DNA of 64,000 nt from Oopsacas minuta (GCA_024704765.1 JAKMXF010000003.1:1-64000), one strand, 5' to 3'; shown: positions 1,437-25,200, counted from the first letter of the stretch. The notes: generated by a model not told the origin, from the letters alone. A program made the numbers and translations.

Positions 1437-4400
1437 ATGGCTACTGCAACTGTTGCCATGGAAACGGAATCGCAAATCCCAATCCCACAGACAGTTGGAC
1501 TATCAGGTCAGATCCCAAACTCAGCTGGGGGGTATTCTTGGCCGATTAGCGATATGGGGAGACTGAGAAGGTTCTTGTGTCTCGGTTCAGAAGGAGGAAG
1601 TTATTATATCAACGAGAAGAAACTAGGTAATTCCAATCAATTCTCGTTAAATCTAATCTCAAGGGACCGTGATAATTCCTTCGATATAACCGATGAAATA
1701 TATGTATGTTACTCTAACGGTTTAGGAACATATTTGGACAGTTTAAGACTTCCTGTATTTCTATACATCATGTTCTATCTTTCTAATTATATATAATTAT
1801 AATTCTAGGAAAGGAGAATGCTAAAACAATAGTAAGAATGTTAGACACAGGAGAAGGTCAGGATGTTGTGATAGAGATTCTGCAGTATAGTACTGAAGGG
1901 AGAACTGCTAAGCAAGAGCCTATCATATTTGCACTTGCTATCTGCGCTAGATTAGGTAAATATGTTTGTTTGTTTGTTTGTTTATTTATCTATTCTCTCA
2001 CAATCCTTTAGGGGATGCAGAGACAAAGAAATCGGCCTACATAGCTCTCCCTAAAGTTTGTAGAATTCCAACTCATTTATTCAGTTTTATTGAATATTGT
2101 GAATCTCTCAGTAAAGGAACTGGATGGGGGAGAGCTCATAGAAGAGCAATATCTGAGTGGTAAGGTTATATTATAATCAATGCGACATCCACACCGAGGT
2201 GCAAGGGAGTCAGAAAATCTGCCCAATTCCACGTTTTTGTAGAGGCATTCGCTCTATTAATTTTCACTCCGTTTCCAGGAGTTCCTTGTTTCCACAGCCC
2301 CGTTCCCGTTTGTGTGTGTTACACTGTAATAATCATTACACTAATTACGAATTAGGTATACAGAGAAAGCTCCATATCCGCTCAGTATCTTAGTTACCAA
2401 ATATCAACAAAGGAATGGGTGGTCTCACAGAGATCTACTGAGACTTTGTCATCTTAAAACTGACAGAGATGAACTCAATATAATATTCAGGTATATATTA
2501 AGCCCTATACATATTTCACTGATAAATCACATTCCATTCCCGTATCCTAGATACATAATTAAAGGAATGGATCAAGTAATAACTGATTACGAACATTTGA
2601 CTTCAAACCCGGAAATATTAAAAGTATTTGAGTTCTTTCAAGCAGTTGAAAAAGCGAAGTCTTGTACGAAACCAGAAGATATTATCCCATTAATTAACAT
2701 TTATGGCCTGGTTCGTGAACACATTCCAACACCTTTGCTTAGCAACGCAGAAGTATGGCGAGCTCTACTCCAGAAAATGCCAATGACAGCTATGATCAGG
2801 AATCTGGGAAAGATGACAGCGATAGAATTATTAGCTCCTCTATCTGGTGAGTTAATTTCTCTCAATGGTTCTATTTTTAGAATTTTAATAATTAAATTAA
2901 TAAAAGTCAAGCAAACCTATTTGAATGGATCTCTACACCCAATCAGAAGCGGGGGATTTCACTAACATACTGTATGCACATAGACAATATAAATAGAAAA
3001 TAAAAATATAATAATTATTCTGAAATGTCAAGTTTGTCGAAGAAGAGAACTAAATCCGCTTACGAGCTGCAGAGAGAGAGGAATATTCGTAGGAACGAGG
3101 AGTTGTTGAGGAAGTTAGGAATTAATATTAGGGAAAAACAGAAGCCACTTCCTGTTATGAAAGATTCATCAGATTCTGAGACTGAGAGTGATCAGGATTG
3201 GAAACCGGAAGAGATAAAGAAAACAATAATAACAACAAAATTCGAACCACCTATGAGAAATACGTATGATCCTGATGAAGTGAAAAATGTTGTAGAAGAA
3301 TTTGAGAGAGAAGAAAACGAAAAACGAAAAGGAGTTAAACGAAAATCAAATTTCCCGAATAATAATATTCCCAAGAAACAGTTTGAAGGAACCACGAATA
3401 TATTCACTTTCGGGAAAGCGAAACTAAAATCTAAGGATTTTGACGCTGAAAAAGATAGTATCGATAATCTCCAAAATGTAGAATTTCGTTCAGATGAAGA
3501 AGTCCCAACAGATAGCAAAATTAGCTATGAGGAGTTTCTACAAAATCGTGAAGATGCCGAATTAATGGAACATGAGATTGCTTTAGTAGGAAGATATATC
3601 CGACAACAGCAATTAGATGAAAGGTTAGACTTACAAGATAATGATAAGCAAACCGATCTCTGTCATGAGAGAAGTAAGAGGCATTTGAGACATGTGGATT
3701 ATACCGAGGAGACATTAACAACAGAGGATAGCTATATCTATTGTGAGGAATGTGACGATTTGCATTTGGGTGATTGTCCAGTATTTGGAGAACTTTGTCC
3801 ATTAGATGAGTCCGCTATGATTATTAGTCCTCTATCCTCCATCCCTATTCCTAAGCAATTGATACTTAAGAACTCCTCAATTCCAAAGGCAGGTTTAGGA
3901 ATATTTGCAACAGAGACCATTGCAATACGTACTAGAATGGGCTCGTATGCTGGCACATTTGTAAGGGGATCTGTTGATAATTTACCGAATGAAAGTGAAT
4001 ATTTGTGGCAGATAAAACGAGGCAATGGGAAAGCTGTATGGTATATTGATGGAGAGGATTTGACCAGGGCGAATTGGATGAGATATGTGAATTGTGCTCG
4101 TCATGAGGATGAACAGAATTTGGTAGCGTTTCAGTTTAAAGGCAGAATATATTATAGAACTTATAAAGTTGTAAATCCTGGAGATGAACTTCTTGTATAC
4201 TACGGGGATCAATATGCCAAACACCTTGGCATAGGACAATTTGATAATATTGATATTAAGACGGTTGAAAACCCACCAATTGAGATGTCAACTGAAACGA
4301 GATTGTATAAACCTAACCGCAAAGACAAACCTTTTAAGTGTTCAGAATGTAATTGCTCTTATTCTAGCAGAATGACTTTGATTGCTCACTCACGTATACA

Positions 4401-7400
4401 CACAGGTGTTAATCTACACGAATGTGAAGTGTGTAATAAGGTATTCATTAGCAAGACAAAGCTAACTGTACACATACGTACACACACAGGAGAGAAACCA
4501 TTCAAATGTATCATATGTGATAAAAGGTTCAGCACAGATAGTAATCTTTCTGTACACATGCGTATACACACAGGAGAGAAACCATTCAAATGTACTATAT
4601 GTGATAAAAGGTTCTGCCAAGATAGCAATCTTTCTGTACACATGCATATACACACGGGAGAGAAACCATTCAAATGTACTATATGTGATAAAAGGTTCAG
4701 TAGTCCTGGAGAGCTCCCTATACACATACGTATACACACAGGAGAGAAGCCCTATGAATGTATATATTGTAAAAACAAATTTAATAACTCTTCTACTAGA
4801 AATAAACACCAAAAAATTCATAAAAACCAAACAAAATATAATAGTTAGATAAATTTGATTGAATTAAATAATATTATCACTTCTATTCTCTCTCAAATAG
4901 TCCTCACATAATACTAGTCACTAAATGTTTCTTCATTTTACTTATTTCCATATCTAGACGAGTCACAGCTGGTATGTAAGAAACTAAAGAACGAGTCAAT
5001 GCTAAAATCAGCTAAAATCCATCCATTCAACTTACTACTAGCACTCAAGGTATATAAAGCTGGTAAAGGAGATAAGGGCTCTCTATCATGGACACCTGTA
5101 CCTGCTATTGTATCTGCCTTAGACGCAGCTTTCTATCTATCTTTCAAGTTTGTTGAACCGACTGGAAAGAAGTTCTTACTAGCCCTTGACGTCAGTGGAT
5201 CAATGACATCTCCTGTGAGTTATGACCCGATTAAGCATACAGTAGACTCCACTTGGCCAGAAACAGAACCAAACAAAATAGTTATTCCTGCTTGTATTAA
5301 TCACATTGCATGTTATTAGATCCTTGGTACTCGTGTCGTCAGTTGTAGAGATGCCTCAGCCGCTATGGCAATGGTTACAATGAAGACTGAAGCTAATTTC
5401 CATGTTCTGGGGTTCTCTCATAAACTGGTAGATGTTCCTATCAAGTAAGTATTAAATCCTCCAAAAGTATTTTACCAAATTTCTGACGAATTTCATACAC
5501 TTGGACAGTGGACTCCGCTTGACTGGGTCACCGGTTAATTCATTGCCAGTTTTTACCTTCGTTTTATTGACACATTGTAAATTCATAGTGCTTCGATGGA
5601 TCTGAATACAGTAACTGAAACTATTAGTGCTATACCCATGGGAGCTACTGATTGCTCACTGCCATTTGAATGGGCACTGAAGAAGAAAGTGAATGTAGAT
5701 ATATTTATTGTGTACACAGATAATGAAACTTATTTCGGAGCTATACACCCGTTTGAAGTTTGTTTATTTCCAGTTTCTATATGTTGCGTATGTCGGTTAT
5801 AAGCACCATCCTCTGGAAAACAGTTCTCATATATTCCAGGATATTTATGCCGGTTATAAGAACAGGCATTGCTACTCACAAGGGTGTTCTTATAACTGAC
5901 ACGTCCACGGTAATCGAGATATTATTATTCGTCCGGAAATGATTGAAACCTGGTTTATACGATTTGGCTATAAGTAAGTTGATATTATTACAAATTCTCA
6001 GAGTAAATAGCATACCGAATTTCCAAATATTTATAAGGTTAACAAATTACTTAATATGATAAGCAAAGTACCCTGTTGTTATTGTTGTTATTGTTGTTAT
6101 TGTTGTTGGTGATGATTTCTAATAAAAAAAATATCATAAGTCTTACAGACATAATGTAAAGCTTATATTATACAAAATAGAGTTTAAGAAATAATAATAA
6201 ATATGAATTCGACAATTTGTCTTTGATTATTTGCTATTATCTCTCTACCAATAATATCGGTAATATACCTTGTGGCTTAGCATAATGCTTGTAAGTATTA
6301 GGTTTCTGGATAAATAGGAATAATTATTTGATTGTATTAATCCAGTGTTTATGAGTGAACATACATCTATTATCAGTAATATTGTAGAGTCTTATGACTC
6401 GATTATCTTCCGAGATTTCGAATCGTCCGTCTTTGGATGGATCAGAATCGGTCTGTCAACATCCGCGTTCATTCTTCTCTCATTCTCTCTTGTCCATATT
6501 CTATTTTTCTCTGCGATATACCGGAATAGGCTTAAGTCCCTTCAGAAACAATTCTACAACTCTCATCTTAAGAACTATTCCCGTATGTACCTATTCCTCG
6601 CAGTAATCCAATTCACCACAGCTATCTTCGAATTATCTGAACTAACTGGACATTCTATTATCAGCTCTAACCAGGAGATTTTCAACGAATTCACGTCTCA
6701 CAACGGTTGTATCATACATGAATACACTACCATGGCTGCTTTATCAAATTCTCATTTCTTCTTCCTTTTACCACCGATTACTCCAAACTTAATATTCCCG
6801 GTCTTATTAACTCTAATATACAGCTTCTTAATATTTACTGCTAGGATGTTTTCCCCGGATAACAAAAAACTGAAATCGTATTTGTATCGATTACACGTGT
6901 TAGTGTGGACTACTGTACAAGTATCGCTTCTCCTAATCCTCTACTCAAATCATTGGACGCTAATCGTTGCCCCCTTGTTCTTCGCTATATTCGTTATAAT
7001 CGATTTTTCTATGTTCGTTATCTACGCAGTTTCCCTTAAGAAAATTCTCCATAATACCTGTAAGGACGTCATGTGCTATACAGACAATACAAGAGACATA
7101 TCACAGATAATTAACTTCTACAATTTGTATAAGAGGTGTATAATATTTCTCGTTATTTCTCTCTTACTTCTTTCCCTATCCCTGGTCCTAACAGCCATAT
7201 TTGACGGTGTTAGAAGCTTCCTATTGAATGATTGTTTCTATAAGATAGATAAACTGGATAATGCGCACTATGAAACAGATCATATCTTGGGTAAAGTGGT
7301 AGTAATATCAATTATAATGTTGAAGTTCTCATCCATGGTTATTTTTGATTTATTTGTGGGTGCTTCTAGCGTAATTATTTGCGTTAAAGTTGTGGTATTC

Positions 7401-15781: not shown

Positions 15782-16230
15782 CTGTATCTGAATATGCTCC
15801 TACCCCCCTACCCCCTTGAATTCTATAAAGATTTTATCCTTTTTACCTTTTCTAATTATTTATTCTAATTACATATAAATATTTATCGATTTTGGAAAAT
15901 ACAACACATTCCATCTACTAGGAAAAGAAACTAGCGGATGGAATGTGTTATATTTTCGCGGATGTTTTTTGACACCTTTTGGGGGATATTTTTACACTTA
16001 AAGTTGCCAAAATAAGCTGGATTTACAGCCAAAAACGTGACAGTTTGAAAAGATATTATCTATCAGCCCTCAGATCTCAAATATTAAGTTTCTATGAAAA
16101 TATATTATAAGAATTTATGTAAATTTTTCGATCCAATTTCTCAATATTTACAATTAATATTGACACATTTGACAGTCCGTTGGTGTTCGTATAAACGAAG
16201 TTACGCTGTGTATTATACTCTAATCAGCGG

Positions 16231-19200
16231 ATGAGTGACCAAAAGAGAAATTCAGCGATCTGCTTATCAGGGCTAGAAGACGCAATAGATATTCTCTTAC
16301 AACAGAATCTTCATAGGAATATTCACACCACCTGTTGTATTATTAGCCTCCTACAGGAATACATTACATATCTACTACCAATCATTGATGTTGATATAAC
16401 CGATCAAGATAGAATTACCCCAGATACCAATACGGCCATTAGGATTGTATTAGAATTAGATAGAGGAGAACATTCCGGAGTGTTGCTAGGTTACATGGAA
16501 GCGGAAGTAGAGAATAGAGTGTTTATTGAGCAAATAGCGATTGGTAGTAAAGCTGAAGAGTTTGAAGAAATTGAAATTGATCATATCATTTTAGGTATAT
16601 ACGAATATTCATACTAACCATCTACGTTACTTCCCGCCATGATACACCCGAAAATATACAGAAATATAGCAAAATATCAGAATCCCCGGGATATTTGGGT
16701 ATCGCTTATAAGAACATGCCGGATATAATTACCATCCACTGACAACCTTTCTCATATATTCCTGTCTATTATACCCGGTATAAGGACATGTATTGTTACT
16801 CACAAGGGTGTTCTTATAACCGGCATTTCCTGTATTCTATAGAGATAAACTCCCATCCTTTGAGTCGCTGCTCGCTAGAGAGAGCACAGGTCTGGCTTGA
16901 GAGCGCTGAGAGAGGAGGGAAACTAGAAATGTTGTTATCTCGTAGTATAAGTATAGAGAGAGAGATTGCAAGGGGCCGTGTATACAGAGCTATTGATAAG
17001 TTATCTTTGAGATTATCTGAAGCAGCTGTGAGACGAGCTAGTGGTTAGTCCACTAATATTAATACAAATGAACTTCCATAAACGAGGAATTCGATAGGAA
17101 AAGCATATTTCGGAATATGTGACCAACTCAGAATATTCCAATTTTGCTATAATTAAGTGTATCATATTAGGTGTGAACGACCTAGAGGCATTGTCCCGTG
17201 TAGTCAGAACTCTAGCTATACAAAGACATGACCCCTCAGATGCTAATAGAAATGTATTAGATAGGGAAAATACGCTACACATCATGAAGGGGAGAGATGA
17301 TATAGGAATTATCCTGTCAAATAATGGAGGTAAGAGATGGAGACAACTGTGTTAAGACAACAAACAACTTGTTGTTATTTACAATTATCCACAGGTAATG
17401 ATCATGTTTATAAGATAGAATCTATCGCAGAACGGTCAGCAGCTAACAGAGATGGGAGATTACAGACAGGAGATGTTATTCTTAAAGTAAATGGGGTAAC
17501 ACTTGCTGGACTAACAAATCATGACGTTATGGAACTATTAAATGTGAATAGATCCTATATCCAGATAGTGTTAGATAATAAACTTGTGGCTGATAGTAGT
17601 AATGATGTTTCAAATACGAACTCTGTGATTATAGTAGAAGAGAATATTGAAAAGAGATCGATTGAGAATGAAAACAGTGAGTATTGTATGCCACAATTGA
17701 TTGTGACTCAACCACTTTGCATTGCCACATCTCGAAAACTATAAATCTGATTTGTATACTCAAAATTGCAAAATTGTTGTTCAGAGTTCCATCTTCCCCA
17801 AAAGATTTTTTCTTGGGACAATTTGACTTCGAATTTATAGCTAATGCCTTTAGGTGTCAAACAACATGATACCATTTCACCACACAAACCTCCTATACCT
17901 GATACCAACTGGTCTGGTGATCATTTAATTAGAGAGAGTTCCCTTGAGTACCCTACATGGTCCAGATTGTCCCAGCGGTCTTACTCTAGTGAGAACTCAT
18001 TTATTGGAACCAGAAATTCACCAATGAGATCTTCTTTCCAAGTACTTAATTGATAATTGTGTTTGTTTGTTTGTTTGTTTGTTTATTATATTCATATACA
18101 CTAGGTCAGACACGTAGCACTATCTCGTAGCGAAAGCAAGCCCTTAGGATTCACTATAGCAGGAGGTAAAGGTTCAAGGAAAGGAGATATAGGAATATTT
18201 GTAGGTCATATCCATGACAACGGTGCTGCCTCACAGGAAGGCACTATGAAGGTTTGGAATTGGAATTAATTACTATAATTAAAATAATTGGTTCCAATTT
18301 AGATAGGAGATGAGATATTGGAGGTAAATGGAATGTCTTTAGAAGGAATGTCACAGAGAAAAGCCCTACAAACATTCAAGAAACTCAAGCAAGGATTAGT
18401 TACAATTAAACTGAAATCAAGATCATTACAACCGGAACTATCAGCTAATTTTGTGCTACAAAATGTTATATTGAATAAAACAGCTGATGCGGGTTTGGGA
18501 CTTGAATTAATCGTCCTTATTGATGCTCGAGGAGGATACCTTGATGGTATTTATGTACAGGTAACAAGTTTCACATATATTACGTCACTGTTTGTTGGGA
18601 AATTGTTTCAGCTCCCCTGCCAGGAGCGAGGTTACCTGTCGCAGTGATTTAATCTTCACAGACCTCTTTTAACGCGCTTAATTAACATATTTAGAAGTAG
18701 AGTTATTGAATTTTCCATGAATTGGACACTTTGTATTTTGATAAAGTCATAACATAATGAGAAACCACAGATAGACATCATGTGTAGCTGAAACAAGTTC
18801 CTCATTAACAGGCCCTTTTCTGTGTTTATTAGTTGTTATTAATAGAATGTAAGAGAAGGTTCAGTAGCCTTCCAAGACGGATCTCTAAAGAGAGGTGATC
18901 AGTTATTAACTATCAACGGAGACCCTTTAATGAGTACAAACCTCCGACGGGCTCATGCTATTATCGGCACATTAACACCTGGAGAGGTAGATATAGGTAT
19001 ACGGAGGTACTCTCCTGTAGAACCATTAGAGAGACTTCTCACACTAACTAAGAGGCAGAATAGATTGCAGCCAATACCGAGTCAACAGAGCATGAGGTAA
19101 ACACCCATACACTCAACTCCAGTTATATCTAAGCTCAAGGGACCGTGATAATTTTCTCCCTAATGTAATTAATAGACTCGAGCCCAGATCACCAAGTTAC

Positions 19201-22200
19201 CAAGCTGATGCTAGCTCAATATTTCTACAAGAAATTACTCAATTAAGCTCAGATGCTAGTGACAATGATGACGCAATGGAATCTGATTTAACTAAACTTA
19301 TAGCTGGTATAGAGAGGGCGAATTCTTTCACTAGAGGGGCACATGGCTCTGAAACAGCTCTCCGGATGAGTAGAGAGGAACTAGAGGGTACAAATATAGA
19401 TGCATTGTTCTCTCCAATTGATACCCACCCGATAAAAGAGGAACAATTGGTATGCAGGTTACTATTTCTTGGATTCTTATTAAAAAAAAAGCACACTCAA
19501 TGAACTACAGTCAACTTCCATTATATCTAAGCTCAAGGGACCCCGATAATTCATTCGATATAACGCGAGTTGACTGTATTATCATATAATCTAATTATAG
19601 GCAGGATCAGACTCCGAGGAGACTATGAGTGACGTATTTACAGAACCTCTAATCTTGTCTAAACCTAAACTATTACATGAGAACAGTAGTAAGAGAGATC
19701 TAGAAAGGTTAGAGATAGCTAGAAATGGTTATAGCAGTGATATTGTAACAGAGATTGTTACACTACATAGAAGTATGGGACAAACTTTAGGTAAGAATTG
19801 TATAGACCCCCTTGTTGATCCACTGTATCTCATATTTCATGAATATCTGTGTGTGTGTGTGTGTATAGGAATGAACGTTATTGCATCTAGTACACCACAA
19901 CTAGGCGTACTAGTCACAAGTATCCTCAAAGACGGACCTGCAGCTAAGCAAGCGCGTATCAGAGTTGGAGATGAACTGTTAGAAATAAACAACACCTCAC
20001 TAATTGGATTAACTCAATCTAAAGTGTTGAGTTTGTTATCTTCTCTAACAGGGGAAATGAATTTTAAAGTAATCCGTACTCCAGACAAGATTGATATAGC
20101 AAAGGATGATGTTAGAGAGGAAATAGGGAGCAGTGAGACTAGGAAATTGGACCAGGTGAGAAATGTGCCTATTTCATGGTTACTACAGCCAATCCCGTCA
20201 TATCGAAGTGTAAAATTGTACAAATATGGTCCCAAACCGTCAAACTAACATATTCCATCAGTTATACCGAAGTAATTATCGTTGGTCCTTTGAGCTTCGA
20301 TATAACAGGAGTTAACTGTATGGATTATGCTCAGCTGTCGATAGACTTCATGTGAGTAGCGGAGAAGGATTTAATTGGGGGTATACAAGTAGATTTTTGC
20401 ATTTTCGGACATCGGAGGTACTCATTGTTTCGGTGCATATTATCTGACTATAATTATTTTATCAGGTTACAAGTTCCTTTCCAGGATATGACATGCTAGA
20501 ACTTACATTCTCAAGACACACTTCAGAGACCTTAGGCATAACCTTATCTCCCAGTAAGGGACAAACAGAGGGGTATCTACAAATTAGAAGGGTCTTAGTA
20601 GAAGGACTAGCTCACAGAGACGGTAGACTTAAGAAATTTGACAGACTCTACGCGTTGGATAGTGCTCCTTTGTATAAACGTCCAAGTGTTGAGGTTATGA
20701 GGATGTTGAGACAAACAGACAATGTATTCACTTTGATAATACTGAGGGAAGTTATTAGACGTCTGGCGAATAGTGAGACCTCTCTCACTGCCAGTTCTAT
20801 ATCTGTTGCATCTCAAGGTGTGTATATATGTATGTATTATAGTAATATACATACACCAATACTGTATCCATTAGGTTTGAAGAAAGGTATGCTATTAAAG
20901 ACACACAAATACGCTGGGTCCTTTGAAGATTCTTTGAAAGACATCCGATCTAACGATCCTATAACTTCAGTGCATGTAGCTACAAAGCTTGTTACTGATA
21001 TTAAACCTAGCATGGATGGTATATCTGGGTATAATTCAGAATTTACCAATATTACTCCTGCTAGCAGTGAGGACTATATCGATAATAGAGGAGACAGACA
21101 GGTTGTTAGTAGTCCTGTAGATGATTAATTAGTGGATCAGGGGCCAATTGGGTCACTTGGCCAGAACTGAAGTGTTAAATGCCCACTGGTAATCCTGTCA
21201 ACTCCCATTATATCTAACACGGATATATAGAAATACCCGCTATACCGAAGTGTGAAATTGTACAAAGATGGTCCCAAACTGTCAAAGTAACATATAATCC
21301 ATCGGTTATATCGGAGTAATTATCACGGTCCCTTGAGCTTAGATATAACAGGAGTTAACTGTAGGCCCCTTTTGTCATACGCATAACGAGATTTCTCACT
21401 CCTATTCATACTTAATGAGTCTCCTATAGGATCAGGAAGAAGTGATATCAACAAATCAACAATCAGTCTCAGACAACAAACTGAAAGGGTTTAACCCGAA
21501 AAGAGTTCTATTTCGGAAAAGACATTTAGTTAAAACTTCAAATCTGACCGAGAGTATTGACGCGCCGCCCCACGACGCCCGAGTGGCTGAGGAGAGGAGA
21601 ACCTCATTCGTACAGCAGACTTCTTCCATGTCTGTAACCGGTGAACTCCCACGACAGCTGGTATTCACAGGATCACACTTAGAAAAACAATCAGAAAATC
21701 GTGAAATTATTCAAACGAAAAATATTAAAAAGATAAAATTCAGGAAAATGTTTAAGATTATAGAAATAAAACTCTCCGAAGTGAAGGACGGTCAGGTATC
21801 TGTCAGTTTCGTGGCGACGAGTAGCCCCTTAAGGAGGACAACGCCCCCTTTAGAAATAGGGGATGTTCTTATAAATATAAACGGCACGCCGGTCACTTCG
21901 AAAAAACAGGCAGAAAAATTGTTATATTCTCTAGAAAAGGGAGAACATACTCTGGAAGTTATCTCAGAAAGTTCGAAAGAAATTCCTCAAATTGTTTTGA
22001 AAGAGGAACATCAAGAAAATACAGAGGTAAACAAAAACAATCTACAAACACAAGAGAATGAACCTTCTAACAATCAATATGAGTTGGAACTTATTGCGAA
22101 GAATAAACAAGAACTATTCGGTTTAGAATTTGGAGATGATAACCAAGCGAAAAGAATTTGTATCACCTCGATAAGCCCCCTGTTCCCTGGGGCAGATTCT

Positions 22201-25200
22201 AGGATCCAAATCGGTGACCAGCTCATATCAATCGACGGAAAATCGTTTGTTGGAATTTCACTCAAAGATGGAAATAAAATATACGAAAATCTCCCAATAA
22301 ATCAACCAGTCCTATTTATACTCCAGCGTACAGGGACAACAACAAATCAGATTGCATACCCTAAGCATACTTCTATGGTTCGTAATCTCTTGCTGAAAGA
22401 CCGAATATTAGAAGTGGAACTAGATAGAGGAGGCGAAAATAAATTAGGTGTTGTGTTGTCCGGCGGGTCTGAAACCAATGAAAAGAGAGTTTATATTAGG
22501 AGGATAGGTCCTGGGTCTATCGTAGCAACCGATGGAAGGCTAAAGGTATGTGTAATTCCATCATATTTGTTGTCTTAAGTTGTTTACTTGTTTATTTAGA
22601 TAAGTGACGAGTTGATTTCTGTTAATGGGATATCGTTAGAAGGTTTGACACACAAAGATGCTCTTTTGGTTATTAAGAATGCAGGAAATGTGCTGAATTT
22701 CAAAGTTTTTAGAAGAAAAGATATTAGAACAATTCCTTCTAGTAAGTTGAGTTTCAATTGGCCCCTTAAGGTGTCAAAACCTCACCCCAAGGGTGTGTTA
22801 AGGGGTCTTTAATTATTGTCTGTTTTAGATAAAACAGTCCCAAGTAGTCCCTCTGTCCTATTCAGAGGATCTAAGAGGTTCATAAACCTAGAGGAGTCAA
22901 CTGATTCTCAAGGAACATTGGACAGTTTGTTAAAGAGGAACAAGCTCACCTCTACACAAGGATTGAGGTAATTAAATTATATATTGAATTACACATAGCT
23001 ATCTTCCATAATGGTAACTATGCAACTGGTAGGTTTCCATCATTAAGTTAGTGAGTCATTAACCAAAGGTAAATCATCCTAACAACGAGATTGTGCAAGA
23101 GTTATGCATGTTTCTCATATGTGTGAGGGCCCCCCCTCCCCCCAATTAATAAATAAACAAATAAAACATGATTAATCACAAGAATAGCAGATTAATTAAT
23201 AATAAACAAACACTATTTCCCATGCTTATATTCTTTAACCAGTTTTGCCAGTGCATCAACTCCCTCGTACAAACCGTCTCCTGTTGTAGCCGATGTCGCT
23301 TGTATGTACCAGTTGTGTCCTTTCAAGGTCTCAAGGCCCAATTCCCGCACGAGATTGGCCGGGTTCTCCGCTCCTGGGAGGTCCTGTTTGTTCGCGAATA
23401 CGACCACAGGAACGCCGGCCATTTCGCCGTCACTTAGTATAGAGTGTAGTTCATTCTTCGCCTCGGGTAGTCGCTCTTTATCTGCTGAATCTACAATGAA
23501 TATGAGACCGTCTGTACCGTTGAAATAGTGTCTCCAGAGTGGCCTGATCTTATCTTGTCCTCCCACGTCCCAGACTGTAAACGATACATTCTTAACCGGG
23601 GCAACTGTCTCCACGTTGAATCCAATCGTCGGAATAGACTGCACAGTCTCGTTGAGCTTGAACTTGTAAAGAATTGTAGTTTTCCCTGCAGCGTCTAGCC
23701 CCAACATCAAAATCCTCGCTTGAGTTGTCCCAAAACTTGAAAGCGATTGCATAATTTTACTCAAAAACAGACCCATTTTCCTAATTCTTATTATAAAACA
23801 GAAAGCTCTGTGTATTTATAGCAATAGAATTGTATATAGGATGTATGTATACACGTTTTACTGGTGATGTGGCAGTATTAAGACTACTATAGGGGCTTCG
23901 AATTACATACGTATTGGGTTTCAACGTAATATGTAGTGATATTGCTCTGCCACGTTTCTGTAAATTACAAGTCTTGAAATCTAAAATTAGACAATTTTTG
24001 TGTATAAAATAAGCGAAAATGAATTCAAAAATATCAGAAATAAATCGACACAAAAATGGGAATCTTTTCTTCAAAAATTGCTTCACTTTTGGACTCAATT
24101 TCTAAGATGGGGACGACACAAGCTCGGGTCCTTATGCTCGGTCTGGACGCCGCGGGTAAGACCACAATCCTATACAAATACAAACTAAGTGAACAAGTCA
24201 CGACTGTTCCAACAATCGGGTTCAACGTGGAAACGGTTTCGCCAGTTAAGAATGTATCTTTCACGGTCTGGGATATCGGGGGACAAGCAACCATCCGCCA
24301 ATTATGGAGGTATTACTATCAAGGAACAGACGGACTCATTTTTATCGTGGACTCGACAGACCGTGAGCGATTTGCGTCCGCGAAAGAGGAACTTTTGAGC
24401 ATACTCGACGATCAAGACATGCACAGTGTACCAGTGGTCGTATTTGCTAACAAACAAGACCTCCCTGGAGCAGAGGAACCATCCAAATTAGCGACAGAAC
24501 TAGGGCTAGATAGTCTAAGAGGGCATGATTGGTACATACAGGGGACTTCCGCTAATTCAGGACAGGGGCTATATGAGGGCATGGAACAGCTTGTCAGGTT
24601 AATTAAGGAAAATAGGAAACATAATTAAGTGTTTTTTGTTTGTTTATGAAGTAAATATATTCATTAAAGCATGATATAATAATAAACATTCCAAATGCCA
24701 ATGGGGTAACTATGGAAACTGGAACATAACTCAGAAGGACAGGGAATTGGTGAATGTCTAGGATGCTATCATTCATGCTATGGAGTACAAATCTAAGCTG
24801 AAGGGACCGTAATAATTCCTTCGATCTAACTGATAGAATATTTGTTACTTAAACGGTTTGTGACCATATTTGTACAATTTCACACTTCGAAATAAAGGGA
24901 TATATCGATATTTTATATAACGAGGGTTGTCCCCGGCCAAGGGTGCTAAAATACAACCTCAAGGAGGTAAGTATCTAATTCCTACTTCGAAGTTATAAAC
25001 TAATTTGTCAGTCAGAAACTTCTTTAAATGTGATATACTCGTATGGTAATTCAATAGGCTTATTAGTATCTTATTAAGGAATAATTTTTCAAAAGTTTAG
25101 GCCTAAAAATGGAAGAAAATAATTCGATTTATTTGCAGAGACTCTGCGCGTCGGTTAAACAGGTGCAAATAGAAGCCAGTCAGACAAATGAGTTTTTAGT

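What the first reader, a model, noticed from the sequence alone, without database searches (positions are those of the whole stretch)
3025..4848. Intronless PRDM9-like gene with a near-complete recombination-hotspot architecture inside a Ro60 intron
Seen: one ORF has, in PRDM9 order, a KRAB-like helix, an SSXRD-like motif ([21 protein letters not shown]; human recalled as [25 protein letters not shown]), a zinc knuckle, a PR/SET domain and 6 C2H2 fingers. Residues matching the three catalytic tyrosines Y276, Y341 and Y357 are present (GSYAG, IYYRT, LVYYG). Known: full-length PRDM9 positions meiotic hotspots in vertebrates and is normally multi-exon. Inference: a catalytically competent, possibly retroposed PRDM9 in a sponge-like animal, which could imply PRDM9-directed recombination or a paralogue family very early in animal evolution.
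Basis: partly seen in the sequence, partly recalled or inferred. Interest (0 to 1): 0.9.

Follow-up and report, generated by a model that had tools for sequence, protein, structure and literature searches.

The report
Glass-sponge PRDM9 gene inside Ro60 intron
This is an intact, transcribed, single-exon member of the PRDM9 family in the glass sponge Oopsacas minuta, sitting inside an intron of the Ro60 gene; PRDM9-family genes were already reported in sponges, but this one keeps most of the full-length layout and occurs with its histone-mark reader, so PRDM9-type marking of recombination sites may predate the sponge/other-animal split.

Summary
Window 3025-4848(+) is one 607-aa ORF with a PR/SET domain closest to PRDM9, all three catalytic tyrosines (Y308, Y377, Y393) and six C2H2 fingers, three of them an 84-bp tandem array.

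- **N-terminus:** it is homologous only to the second half of PRDM9's ancestral KRAB plus the acidic-Trp motif (hhalign 95%).
- **SSXRD-like motif:** it is in register but not statistically secure.
- **Zinc knuckle:** it lacks the canonical His and has another His nearby.
- **Organism and copy number:** the organism is Oopsacas minuta, and the gene is single-copy.
- **Gene model:** RNA-like contigs splice Ro60 across intron 2847-4957 and cover the ORF separately, so NCBI's Ro60-PRDM fusion model is probably wrong.
- **Relatives:** hexactinellid-like assemblies hold intronless orthologues, nested antisense in a multi-PDZ gene. Oopsacas moved its copy about 15 kb, and there is no retroposition signature.
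- **Function clues:** DNA-contact residues diverge far faster than the finger framework between species. A ZCWPW1-like reader co-occurs.

PRDM9-family genes were already reported in sponges (Sycon, Amphimedon, Geodia), so this is a new member of a known kind. Hotspot control is plausible but untested. The scan's other notes on this stretch (half-KRAB, 84-bp array) agree.

The parts
2549..2846 (+). Ro60 (TROVE) exon upstream of the host intron; ends '...LAPLS'
   Evidence: Pfam TROVE hit on ORF 2567-2965. RNA-like joint 2488>2549, and the exon end is found joined to 4957 in 4 contigs.
2847..4957 (+). Ro60 intron (GT..AG, 2111 nt) that contains the whole PRDM9-like gene
   Evidence: Donor GTGAGT at 2847 and acceptor AG at 4956-4957. 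X4 contigs carry the upstream exon end directly before 4957.
2988..2996 (+). TATA-like TATAAATAG about 30 nt upstream of the ATG (possible own promoter; inferred)
   Evidence: Read directly from the sequence. Not tested.
3025..4848 (+). Single-exon PRDM9-subfamily ORF, 607 aa
   Evidence: RNA-like contigs cover 3050-4361 and beyond, with no internal joints.
3049..3219 (+). aa 9-65: second half of the ancestral KRAB-A-like helix, a linker and the acidic Trp motif
   Evidence: Custom aKRAB HMM. hhalign 94.9%, E 4.7e-8. The N-terminal profile retrieves Sycon PRDM9.
3667..3741 (+). aa 215-239: SSXRD-like basic/Tyr/acidic motif, invariant core RHL..DYTEE.L..ED in hexactinellids
   Evidence: In register with SSXRD. 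HMM negative. hhalign local P 0.005.
3742..3789 (+). aa 240-255: pre-SET zinc knuckle with C240, C243 and C251; canonical His replaced by F254, alternative H247
3865..4233 (+). aa 281-403: PR/SET domain with Y308, Y377 and Y393
   Evidence: Pfam PF21549, 131 bits. PDB core-only scores: PRDM9 111 bits against PRDM12 80. Tyrosines.
4333..4836 (+). aa 437-604: six C2H2 zinc fingers
4466..4748 (+). 84-bp tandem array (3.4 units, 86% match) encoding fingers 3-5
   Evidence: TRF. Unit identities 76/84, 67/84 and 65/84, with differences clustered in the recognition helix.
4958..5214 (+). Next Ro60 exon (end of TROVE, start of vWA)
   Evidence: Pfam. Loose ends at 4957 and 5214 in X4.
19625..20248 (+). 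Continuous coding block of the multi-PDZ gene. In other hexactinellid-like assemblies this block is split by about 2.5 kb that hosts the PRDM9-like gene antisense, so this is the empty ancestral slot (near 19828-19835).
   Evidence: tblastn of neighbours from L005, L006 and L008. ORF list.

Best explanation
The ORF is the single, intact, transcribed orthologue of the PRDM9 (Prdm7/9) subfamily in the glass sponge Oopsacas minuta. It is a one-exon gene nested, on the same strand, in a 2.1-kb intron of Ro60, and it is expressed as its own transcript.

Shown here:
- Subfamily identity.
- A complete set of catalytic SET residues.
- N-terminal homology to the second half of PRDM9's ancestral KRAB plus the acidic Trp motif.
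- Six C2H2 fingers whose DNA-contact residues turn over quickly between species.
- Co-occurrence with a ZCWPW1-like zf-CW+PWWP reader.

Inferred mechanism: the finger array binds a species-specific DNA motif. The PR/SET domain then trimethylates H3K4, and probably H3K36, on neighbouring nucleosomes. The ZCWPW1-like protein reads that mark.

My odds that this marking is used, as in vertebrates, to position or repair meiotic double-strand breaks are about 0.35. The overall confidence given below is for the identity and the biochemical mechanism, not for hotspot control.
For: Subfamily identity:
- The best solved-structure match for knuckle plus SET is PRDM9, at 137 bits against PRDM12 at 93.
- With the SET core alone the scores are 111 against 80, 72 and 62 bits.
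- All 120 listed hits of a 5.8-billion-protein search with the SET region are PRDM9/7-type. They include Amphimedon at 53% identity.
- The tyrosines are invariant.

N-terminus:
- hhalign gives 94.9%, E 4.7e-8, to the non-sponge PRDM9 N-terminus.
- The sponge N-terminal profile pulls Sycon ciliatum 'PRDM9' out of 1.84 billion representatives.

Copy number and conservation:
- The gene is single-copy in the 61-Mb genome.
- Eight orthologues at 52-64% identity are all single ORFs. Identity to the Oopsacas protein is 70-77% over knuckle+SET and 40-60% over the N-terminus.
- In the tree, hexactinellids form a clade (99/99) outside a bilaterian PRDM9 clade.

Transcription:
- Run X4 shows GT..AG joints in Ro60 and zero depth in the introns.
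- Depth on the ORF is about 500-2200.
- Depth is zero at 2914-3039 and at 4943.
- Ro60 splices 2846 to 4958.

Fingers and reader:
- Contact residues differ at 79% of positions against 34% for the framework (p = 6e-5). Across nine species fingers F1 and F2 give 0.81-0.92 against 0.31-0.33.
- A ZCWPW1-like gene is present in Oopsacas and in the same unnamed assemblies.
Against: - Only half of the KRAB-A is present. The same short helix motif also occurs in unrelated, fungal-looking proteins.
- SSXRD is not significant by HMM.
- The knuckle's canonical His is missing.
- The finger array is short. Only 0.21 of its within-array diversity falls on contact positions, against 0.60 in a mammalian PRDM9.
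- RNA contigs start at 3050, so use of the ATG at 3025 is supported by conservation of M1 and not by RNA.
- Strand and tissue of the RNA are unknown.
- No other PRDM subfamilies could be put in the tree except PRDM1 and the second Oopsacas PRDM.
- No biochemical or genetic data exist.
Confidence: 0.8

Rival explanations
1. It is a PRDM9-subfamily gene that works as an ordinary sequence-specific chromatin regulator or transcription factor, for example in germline or transposon control. It does not specify recombination sites. This would resemble the KRAB/SSXRD-less PRDM9 paralogues of teleosts and the conserved truncated paralogues of cnidarians.
For: - The KRAB is a half-domain.
- SSXRD is not demonstrable.
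- The knuckle is variant.
- There are only 6 fingers, and the within-array share of diversity at contact positions is 0.21. The cnidarian preprint treats about 0.20 as low.
- In vertebrates, loss of KRAB/SSXRD goes with loss of hotspot control (Baker 2017, as cited).
Against: - Contact residues are the fastest-evolving finger positions between species, which is the opposite of a conserved transcription factor.
- Finger number varies from 3 to 6 among orthologues.
- The catalytic tyrosines are kept.
- A ZCWPW1-like reader co-occurs.
- Sycon, and at least one cnidarian-like PRDM9 (P0011), have the same short N-terminal form.
- prdm9 is up-regulated in Geodia spermatogenesis (PMC7743902).
Confidence: 0.5
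2. The ORF is an exon of a Ro60-PRDM fusion gene, as in the NCBI model of 819 aa. That model runs from PRDM aa 1 to about 580 and is spliced from inside finger 6 to the Ro60 exon at 4958.
For: The deposited model P0001 has exactly this structure. A GT follows '...CCATATGAAT' in finger 6, and the acceptor at 4958 is real.
Against: - Four RNA-like contigs join the upstream Ro60 exon ('...LAPLS') to 4957/4958.
- No PRDM-to-Ro60 joint was listed.
- Depth drops to zero between the ORF and both flanking exons.
- The fusion would cut a finger that is conserved in orthologues. Those orthologues lie nowhere near Ro60.
Confidence: 0.04
3. It is a recent retrocopy or decaying duplicate without function.
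For: - It is intronless and lies in an unusual place.
- A 283-bp fragment copy (95.8% identity) lies 73 kb away beside a mariner-like remnant.
- The two haplotypes differ by 11 non-synonymous and 4 synonymous changes.
Against: - The ORF is open for 607 codons.
- It is the only full copy, and the ancestral slot is empty.
- Orthologues are also intronless, and the SET domain is conserved.
- There is no poly(A) tract. It has 178 nt of its own upstream sequence with a TATA-like box.
- It is transcribed.
Confidence: 0.03

Closest known systems
Vertebrate PRDM9 (mouse/human; structures 4c1q, 4ijd, 6nm4)
   Same: - The domain order is the same: N-terminal KRAB-related region, SSXRD position, pre-SET knuckle, PR/SET, C2H2 array.
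- Identity is 40-43% over knuckle plus SET.
- The three catalytic tyrosines are present.
- The fingers are partly arranged as an 84-bp tandem array.
- A ZCWPW reader is present in the genome.
   Different: - Only the second half of KRAB-A is present.
- SSXRD is not significant.
- The knuckle His is replaced.
- There are six fingers instead of 8-20, with little within-array concentration of diversity at contact residues.
- The gene is single-exon and nested in another gene's intron.
Cnidarian full-length PRDM9 (Rudler et al., bioRxiv 10.64898/2026.09.07.749791; Acropora P0014)
   Same: - It is a non-bilaterian PRDM9 with an N-terminal helix of the same 'SEYEL.R.RNI....E.....LGL' type, an acidic Trp motif and conserved tyrosines.
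- ZCWPW is present.
   Different: - Cnidarians keep the canonical SSXRD, the 'DDDHY' motif and the knuckle His.
- They often have several full-length and truncated paralogues, whereas Oopsacas has one copy.
- The preprint places the origin of PRDM9 function in eumetazoans. This locus would move it one node deeper.
Sponge PRDM9-family genes already on record: Sycon ciliatum EP00117_P037037 (P0181), Amphimedon A0A1X7ULJ8 (P0077), Geodia prdm9 transcripts (PMC7743902)
   Same: - They belong to the same subfamily, at 43-53% identity in SET.
- Sycon shares the short N-terminal helix and the acidic Trp motif.
- The tyrosines are conserved.
   Different: - The Sycon model has a canonical SSXRD but no finger array.
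- The Amphimedon model starts at the knuckle and has no N-terminus.
- The hexactinellid genes have both ends in one ORF.
Teleost PRDM9-beta and other truncated PRDM9 paralogues
   Same: PR/SET plus fingers with reduced or absent KRAB/SSXRD, and low diversity at contact residues within the array.
   Different: - Those paralogues often lose catalytic tyrosines and have slowly evolving fingers.
- Here the tyrosines are intact and contact residues diverge fast between species.

Membership tests
PRDM9 (Prdm7/9 subfamily) | PR/SET domain closer to PRDM9/7 than to any other PRDM | tested here: met
   - PDB, SET core only: PRDM9 111 bits; PRDM12 80; PRDM14 72; PRDM11 62; PRDM2 62; PRDM4 61; PRDM1 55.
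- The top 120 database hits are all PRDM9/7-type.
- A tree against PRDM1 and the second Oopsacas PRDM is consistent.
- A tree with all 14 subfamilies could not be built.
PRDM9, full-length functional type | Catalytic tyrosines Y276, Y341, Y357 | tested here: met
   Y308, Y377 and Y393 align to them. They are invariant in 17 sequences.
PRDM9, full-length functional type | KRAB (ancestral KRAB-A) domain | tested here: inconclusive
   - Only HMM positions 22-47 of 54 match, at 14.3 bits and E 0.01-0.03 with Z = 20000.
- hhalign gives 94.9% over the second half plus the acidic Trp motif.
- The first half is absent in all nine hexactinellid proteins and in Sycon.
- Pfam KRAB is negative, but it also misses amphioxus, urchin and coral controls.
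PRDM9, full-length functional type | SSXRD motif | tested here: inconclusive
   - The position and register are right, and the block is strongly conserved in hexactinellids.
- The custom HMM scores 1 bit or less.
- hhalign local P is 0.005.
- Pfam is negative, with failing controls.
PRDM9, full-length functional type | Pre-SET zinc knuckle (Cys3His) | tested here: inconclusive
   - The three Cys are conserved.
- The canonical His is F254 (F or Y in 8 of 9 hexactinellids).
- H247 is present exactly in those eight, which suggests a ligand swap.
- Zinc binding was not tested.
PRDM9, full-length functional type | Tandem C2H2 array evolving fast at DNA-contact residues | tested here: inconclusive
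   - Between species, contacts differ at 79% of positions against 34% for the rest (p = 6e-5). Finger number varies from 3 to 6.
- There is an 84-bp array of 3.4 units.
- The within-array contact share is only 0.21 (0.43 for the inner three fingers).
- Allelic data are minimal: K479R at position +3 and N588Y at position -1.
PRDM9 pathway | Co-occurrence with ZCWPW1/ZCWPW2 reader | tested here: met
   - One zf-CW+PWWP gene of 262 aa lies on contig C24. Its best PDB hits are the ZCWPW2 and ZCWPW1 CW domains.
- NCBI names it ZCWPW1.
- Homologues are present in the same unnamed assemblies.
- Only one such gene was found.
PRDM9 pathway | Meiotic/germline expression, H3K4me3+H3K36me3 activity, control of DSB sites | not testable with these tools
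   Only bulk RNA-like contigs of unknown tissue and strand show transcription.
Ro60/TROVE protein (as annotated by NCBI) | PRDM ORF spliced in frame to TROVE/vWA exons | tested here: not met
   Ro60 exons splice across the ORF (2846 to 4958). No PRDM-Ro60 joint was seen. Coverage gaps lie on both sides of the ORF.

The most novel reading that the evidence does not exclude
PRDM9-type, zinc-finger-directed marking of meiotic recombination sites, read by a ZCWPW1-like protein, already operated in the common ancestor of sponges and eumetazoans. It used a minimal 'half-KRAB' N-terminus. The full KRAB-A of bilaterians would then be a later elaboration, and the origin of PRDM9 function would be metazoan, not eumetazoan.
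Probability: 0.3. Interest if true: 0.8.

Novelty: new member of a known kind. Interest (0 to 1): 0.5.

Why it matters
Where PRDM9-directed recombination began is an open question, and the newest work argues for a eumetazoan origin from cnidarian genomes. Here a glass sponge, and at least three related unnamed assemblies, carry a single PRDM9 orthologue with several hallmarks together. These are intact catalytic residues, the PRDM9-specific N-terminal region, fast-changing DNA-contact residues and a co-occurring ZCWPW1-like reader.

That gives a concrete candidate for testing the system one node deeper in the animal tree. It also suggests that the ancestral KRAB was only the short helix now shared by sponges and at least some cnidarian-type PRDM9 sequences.

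On the practical side, the public Ro60-PRDM fusion model is probably wrong. The locus also shows a nested gene changing host intron.

Tried and rejected
- Pfam KRAB, SSXRD and PR-knuckle models gave no hit on the sponge proteins at E up to 10. I reject this as evidence of absence, because the KRAB and SSXRD models also miss amphioxus, sea-urchin, coral and Sycon PRDM9. Only Latimeria is detected by them. The PR-knuckle model does give sub-threshold hits in coral and amphioxus.
- A custom SSXRD HMM gave no significant hit, so I do not claim an SSXRD domain.
- There is no paralogue family in Oopsacas. The genome has one full copy, a 283-bp fragment and one unrelated PR-domain locus.
- There is no retroposition signature: no poly(A) tract, the gene has its own upstream sequence, and the orthologues are also intronless. 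The only flanking direct repeat is an 11/13 match at 2853 and 4884, which may be chance.
- Ro60 linkage is not conserved. There is no TROVE gene near the orthologues.
- A SET tree with all PRDM subfamilies was not possible. The capped searches returned only PRDM9/7-type proteins plus one PRDM1, and PDB sequences cannot be fetched by reference. I used PDB score ranking instead.
- A skip of one 84-bp unit (4572>4657) in a DNA-like contig of run X1 is not taken as a finger-number polymorphism. A 42-nt stretch fits both sides, so a repeat collapse in contig assembly explains it equally well.
- Structure and complex prediction were not run. Sequence matches to solved PRDM9 structures already settle the fold, and no direct binding claim is made.


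Full report
**What is there.** Window 3025-4848(+) is one uninterrupted 607-codon ORF.
- Pfam finds a PR domain (PF21549, aa 281-403, E 2e-38), SET, and five to six C2H2 fingers. It finds no KRAB, SSXRD or PR-knuckle.
- Against all solved structures, aa 231-403 match the PRDM9 knuckle+SET crystal chains best: 4c1q at E about 1e-38, with PRDM12 next at 1e-24.
- With the knuckle removed, the SET core still prefers PRDM9. The scores are 111 bits against 80 (PRDM12), 72 (PRDM14), 62 (PRDM11, PRDM2), 61 (PRDM4) and 55 (PRDM1).
- The printed alignment puts Y308, Y377 and Y393 opposite mouse Y276, Y341 and Y357. These three are invariant in 17 aligned sponge, cnidarian and bilaterian sequences.

**Organism and copy number.** An identical protein segment is deposited for Oopsacas minuta, a glass sponge. 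The window is contig C3:1-64000 of a 61.5-Mb assembly.
- The genome holds one full copy.
- It also holds a 283-bp fragment with 95.8% identity to window 3261-3543, at C3:77683-77964(-). The fragment lies next to a mariner-like transposase remnant.
- There is only one other PR-domain locus, on contig C222. That one has Phe at the last catalytic Tyr position.
- So there is no paralogue family here.

**N-terminal architecture.**
- *KRAB.* I built an HMM from 14 non-sponge PRDM9 KRAB regions (vertebrates, amphioxus, a mollusc, a coral). It hits the sponge N-termini at aa 9-40, but only with model positions 22-47 of 54. For Oopsacas the score is 14.3 bits, conditional E 1.2e-5, and E 0.01-0.03 for a 20,000-protein proteome.
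- *Profile comparison.* Nine hexactinellid N-termini (A1) against eleven non-sponge PRDM9 N-termini (A2) give 94.9% probability, E 4.7e-8. The match covers the second half of KRAB-A, the linker and the acidic 'SDSD..W.P' motif.
- *Independent check.* The sponge N-terminal profile, searched against 1.84 billion representatives, returns only 12 proteins. One is Sycon ciliatum 'PRDM9' (EukProt). It has the same short helix, the acidic Trp motif, a canonical SSXRD and a SET domain.
- *Caveat.* Two other weak hits are non-PRDM proteins carrying the same YE..R..NI..N..LL..LG helix. The helix alone is therefore not diagnostic.
- *Start codon.* The first half of KRAB-A is missing in all nine hexactinellid proteins. 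All of them start with a conserved Met 7-10 residues before the helix.
- *SSXRD.* The SSXRD-like block (aa 215-239) is the most conserved part of the N-terminus in hexactinellids and is in register with SSXRD. A custom SSXRD HMM gives nothing, and hhalign gives only a local P of 0.005.
- *Pfam controls.* Pfam's negatives carry no weight, because its KRAB and SSXRD models detect Latimeria only. They miss amphioxus, sea urchin, coral and Sycon.
- *Knuckle.* C240, C243 and C251 are kept, but the canonical His is F254. Eight of nine hexactinellid proteins have F or Y there, and exactly those eight have His at 247. The ninth has the canonical His and has Tyr at 247. This looks like a ligand swap, which is an inference.

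**Zinc fingers.** There are six fingers (aa 437-604). Fingers 3-5 are an 84-bp tandem array (4466-4748, 3.4 units, 86% match) whose differences cluster in the recognition helix.
- Within the array, only 0.21 of amino-acid diversity falls on positions -1, +2, +3 and +6. The figure is 0.43 for the three inner fingers and 0.60 in a mammalian PRDM9 scored the same way.
- Between species the picture differs. Oopsacas against its closest six-finger orthologue differs at 79% of contact positions and at 34% of the others (Fisher p = 6e-5).
- Across nine proteins, the orthologous fingers 1 and 2 show 0.81-0.92 mean pairwise difference at contact positions against 0.31-0.33 elsewhere. Finger number ranges from 3 to 6.
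- DNA specificity is therefore not conserved. That fits PRDM9-like evolution, but it does not prove it.

**Host gene and transcription.** The flanking ORFs carry TROVE and vWA_Ro60 matches on the same strand.
- Of four public runs from one sample, X4 behaves as RNA. It shows GT..AG joints in Ro60 (1622>1805, 2158>2355, 2488>2549, 5444>5589) and zero depth at intron positions.
- Four X4 contigs carry the end of the upstream exon directly before 4957. With the sequence, this defines a GT..AG intron at 2847-4957 that contains the whole ORF.
- X4 contigs cover the ORF from 3050 onward at depths of roughly 500-2200. Depth is zero at 2914-3039 and at 4943. No PRDM-to-Ro60 joint was listed.
- This fits a separate transcript better than a retained intron, or than the 819-aa NCBI fusion model.
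- Limits: these are contigs without strand information, the tissue is unknown, and the first 25 nt of the ORF are not covered.
- A second haplotype differs at 15 sites (11 non-synonymous). These include K479R (+3 of finger 2), N588Y (-1 of finger 6) and one conservative change in SET.

**Relatives and history.** Eight proteins of 52-64% identity come from unnamed ENA assemblies. The four I located lie in three of these assemblies, whose neighbouring genes are collinear with Oopsacas. All eight are single ORFs of 535-630 aa.
- In three of four loci examined, the gene lies antisense between coding blocks of a multi-PDZ gene. Those blocks map to window 16.2-22.7 kb.
- In Oopsacas, the two blocks that flank the gene elsewhere are one continuous ORF (19625-20248). 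The ancestral slot is therefore empty, and that intron is absent.
- No Ro60 sequence lies near the orthologues.
- So intronlessness and nesting are old in this lineage. Oopsacas moved the gene about 15 kb, and inverted it, into a Ro60 intron.
- There is no poly(A) trace. An imperfect 13-nt direct repeat flanks the insert at 2853 and 4884 and may be chance.
- In a SET tree, hexactinellids form a clade (99/99) and bilaterian PRDM9s form another (81/95). Sycon, Amphimedon and Acropora sit unresolved at the base, and PRDM1 and the second Oopsacas PRDM sit on very long branches.

**Partner.** Oopsacas has two zf-CW loci. One is MORC-like. The other is a 262-aa single ORF with zf-CW plus PWWP, whose best structural matches are the ZCWPW2 and ZCWPW1 CW domains. 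NCBI names it ZCWPW1, and homologues of 50-62% identity occur in ENA assemblies.

**Literature.**
- Vervoort et al. 2015 (PMC4760075) allowed Prdm7/9 in the metazoan ancestor, depending on the animal tree.
- Koutsouveli et al. 2020 (PMC7743902) list prdm9 among genes up-regulated in Geodia spermatogenesis.
- Rudler et al. 2026 (bioRxiv 10.64898/2026.09.07.749791) show full-length PRDM9 with ZCWPW1/2 in 28 cnidarians and speak of a eumetazoan origin of function. They used annotated sequences 'from porifera to primates' only to build HMMs.
- I found no description of the hexactinellid gene, its architecture or its nesting.

**Verdict.** This is a genuine, expressed, single-copy PRDM9-subfamily orthologue, and a new member of a known kind. 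It most likely binds DNA through its fingers and methylates H3K4 and H3K36, with a ZCWPW1-like reader available. Whether it positions meiotic breaks is open, and I put that at about 0.35.

Noticed in passing
window 3025-4770 joined to 4958 onward (NCBI protein P0001): The deposited Oopsacas 'Ro60-like' protein of 819 aa is a chimera of the PRDM9-like ORF and the C-terminal Ro60 exons. RNA-like contigs support Ro60 splicing across the ORF instead.
   Followed up: yes
G000:C3:77683-77964 (L010:5683-5964, minus strand): A 283-bp copy of window 3261-3543 (the disordered N-terminal linker) with 95.8% identity forms an 86-aa ORF. It lies beside a mariner/Tc1-like transposase remnant (L010:6754-7218) and among tandem NHL-repeat genes.
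   Followed up: partly
window 3742-3789 (aa 240-255) and orthologues: The canonical fourth zinc ligand His of the PR knuckle is F or Y in 8 of 9 hexactinellid proteins. Exactly those eight have His four residues after the second Cys. Sycon has Cys at the canonical place. This may be a ligand swap.
   Followed up: partly
P0180, P0182 (unnamed JGI/Logan proteins): The helix motif YE..R..NI..N..LL..LG[IL], which forms the second half of the ancestral KRAB, also occurs, once twice in tandem, in unrelated low-complexity proteins without a SET domain. It may be an older module than KRAB.
   Followed up: no
window 4572-4657: A DNA-like contig of run X1 lacks exactly one 84-bp finger unit. This is either a finger-number allele or a repeat collapse in contig assembly.
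   Followed up: no
window 2853-2865 and 4884-4896: An imperfect 13-nt direct repeat (11/13) flanks the PRDM gene inside the Ro60 intron. Without the 2.03 kb between the copies the intron would be about 80 nt, a typical size here. This may be a target-site-like duplication or chance.
   Followed up: no
window 16200-24600: This block is collinear with the neighbourhood of the PRDM9-like gene in three other hexactinellid-like loci (multi-PDZ gene, Arf-like GTPases). In Oopsacas, the PDZ-gene intron that hosts the PRDM gene elsewhere is absent.
   Followed up: partly
G000:C3:69700-91600 (L009-L011): At least five tandem paralogues of a coiled-coil plus NHL-repeat gene (about 390 aa) lie here. A homologue lies downstream of the PRDM9-like gene in assembly ERZ20067936.
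   Followed up: no
G000:C222:1563381-1563638 (L015:1399-1656, minus strand): This is the only other PR-domain gene of the genome. It is multi-exon, has C2H2 fingers downstream, and has Phe in place of the last catalytic Tyr ('LVWFSD').
   Followed up: no
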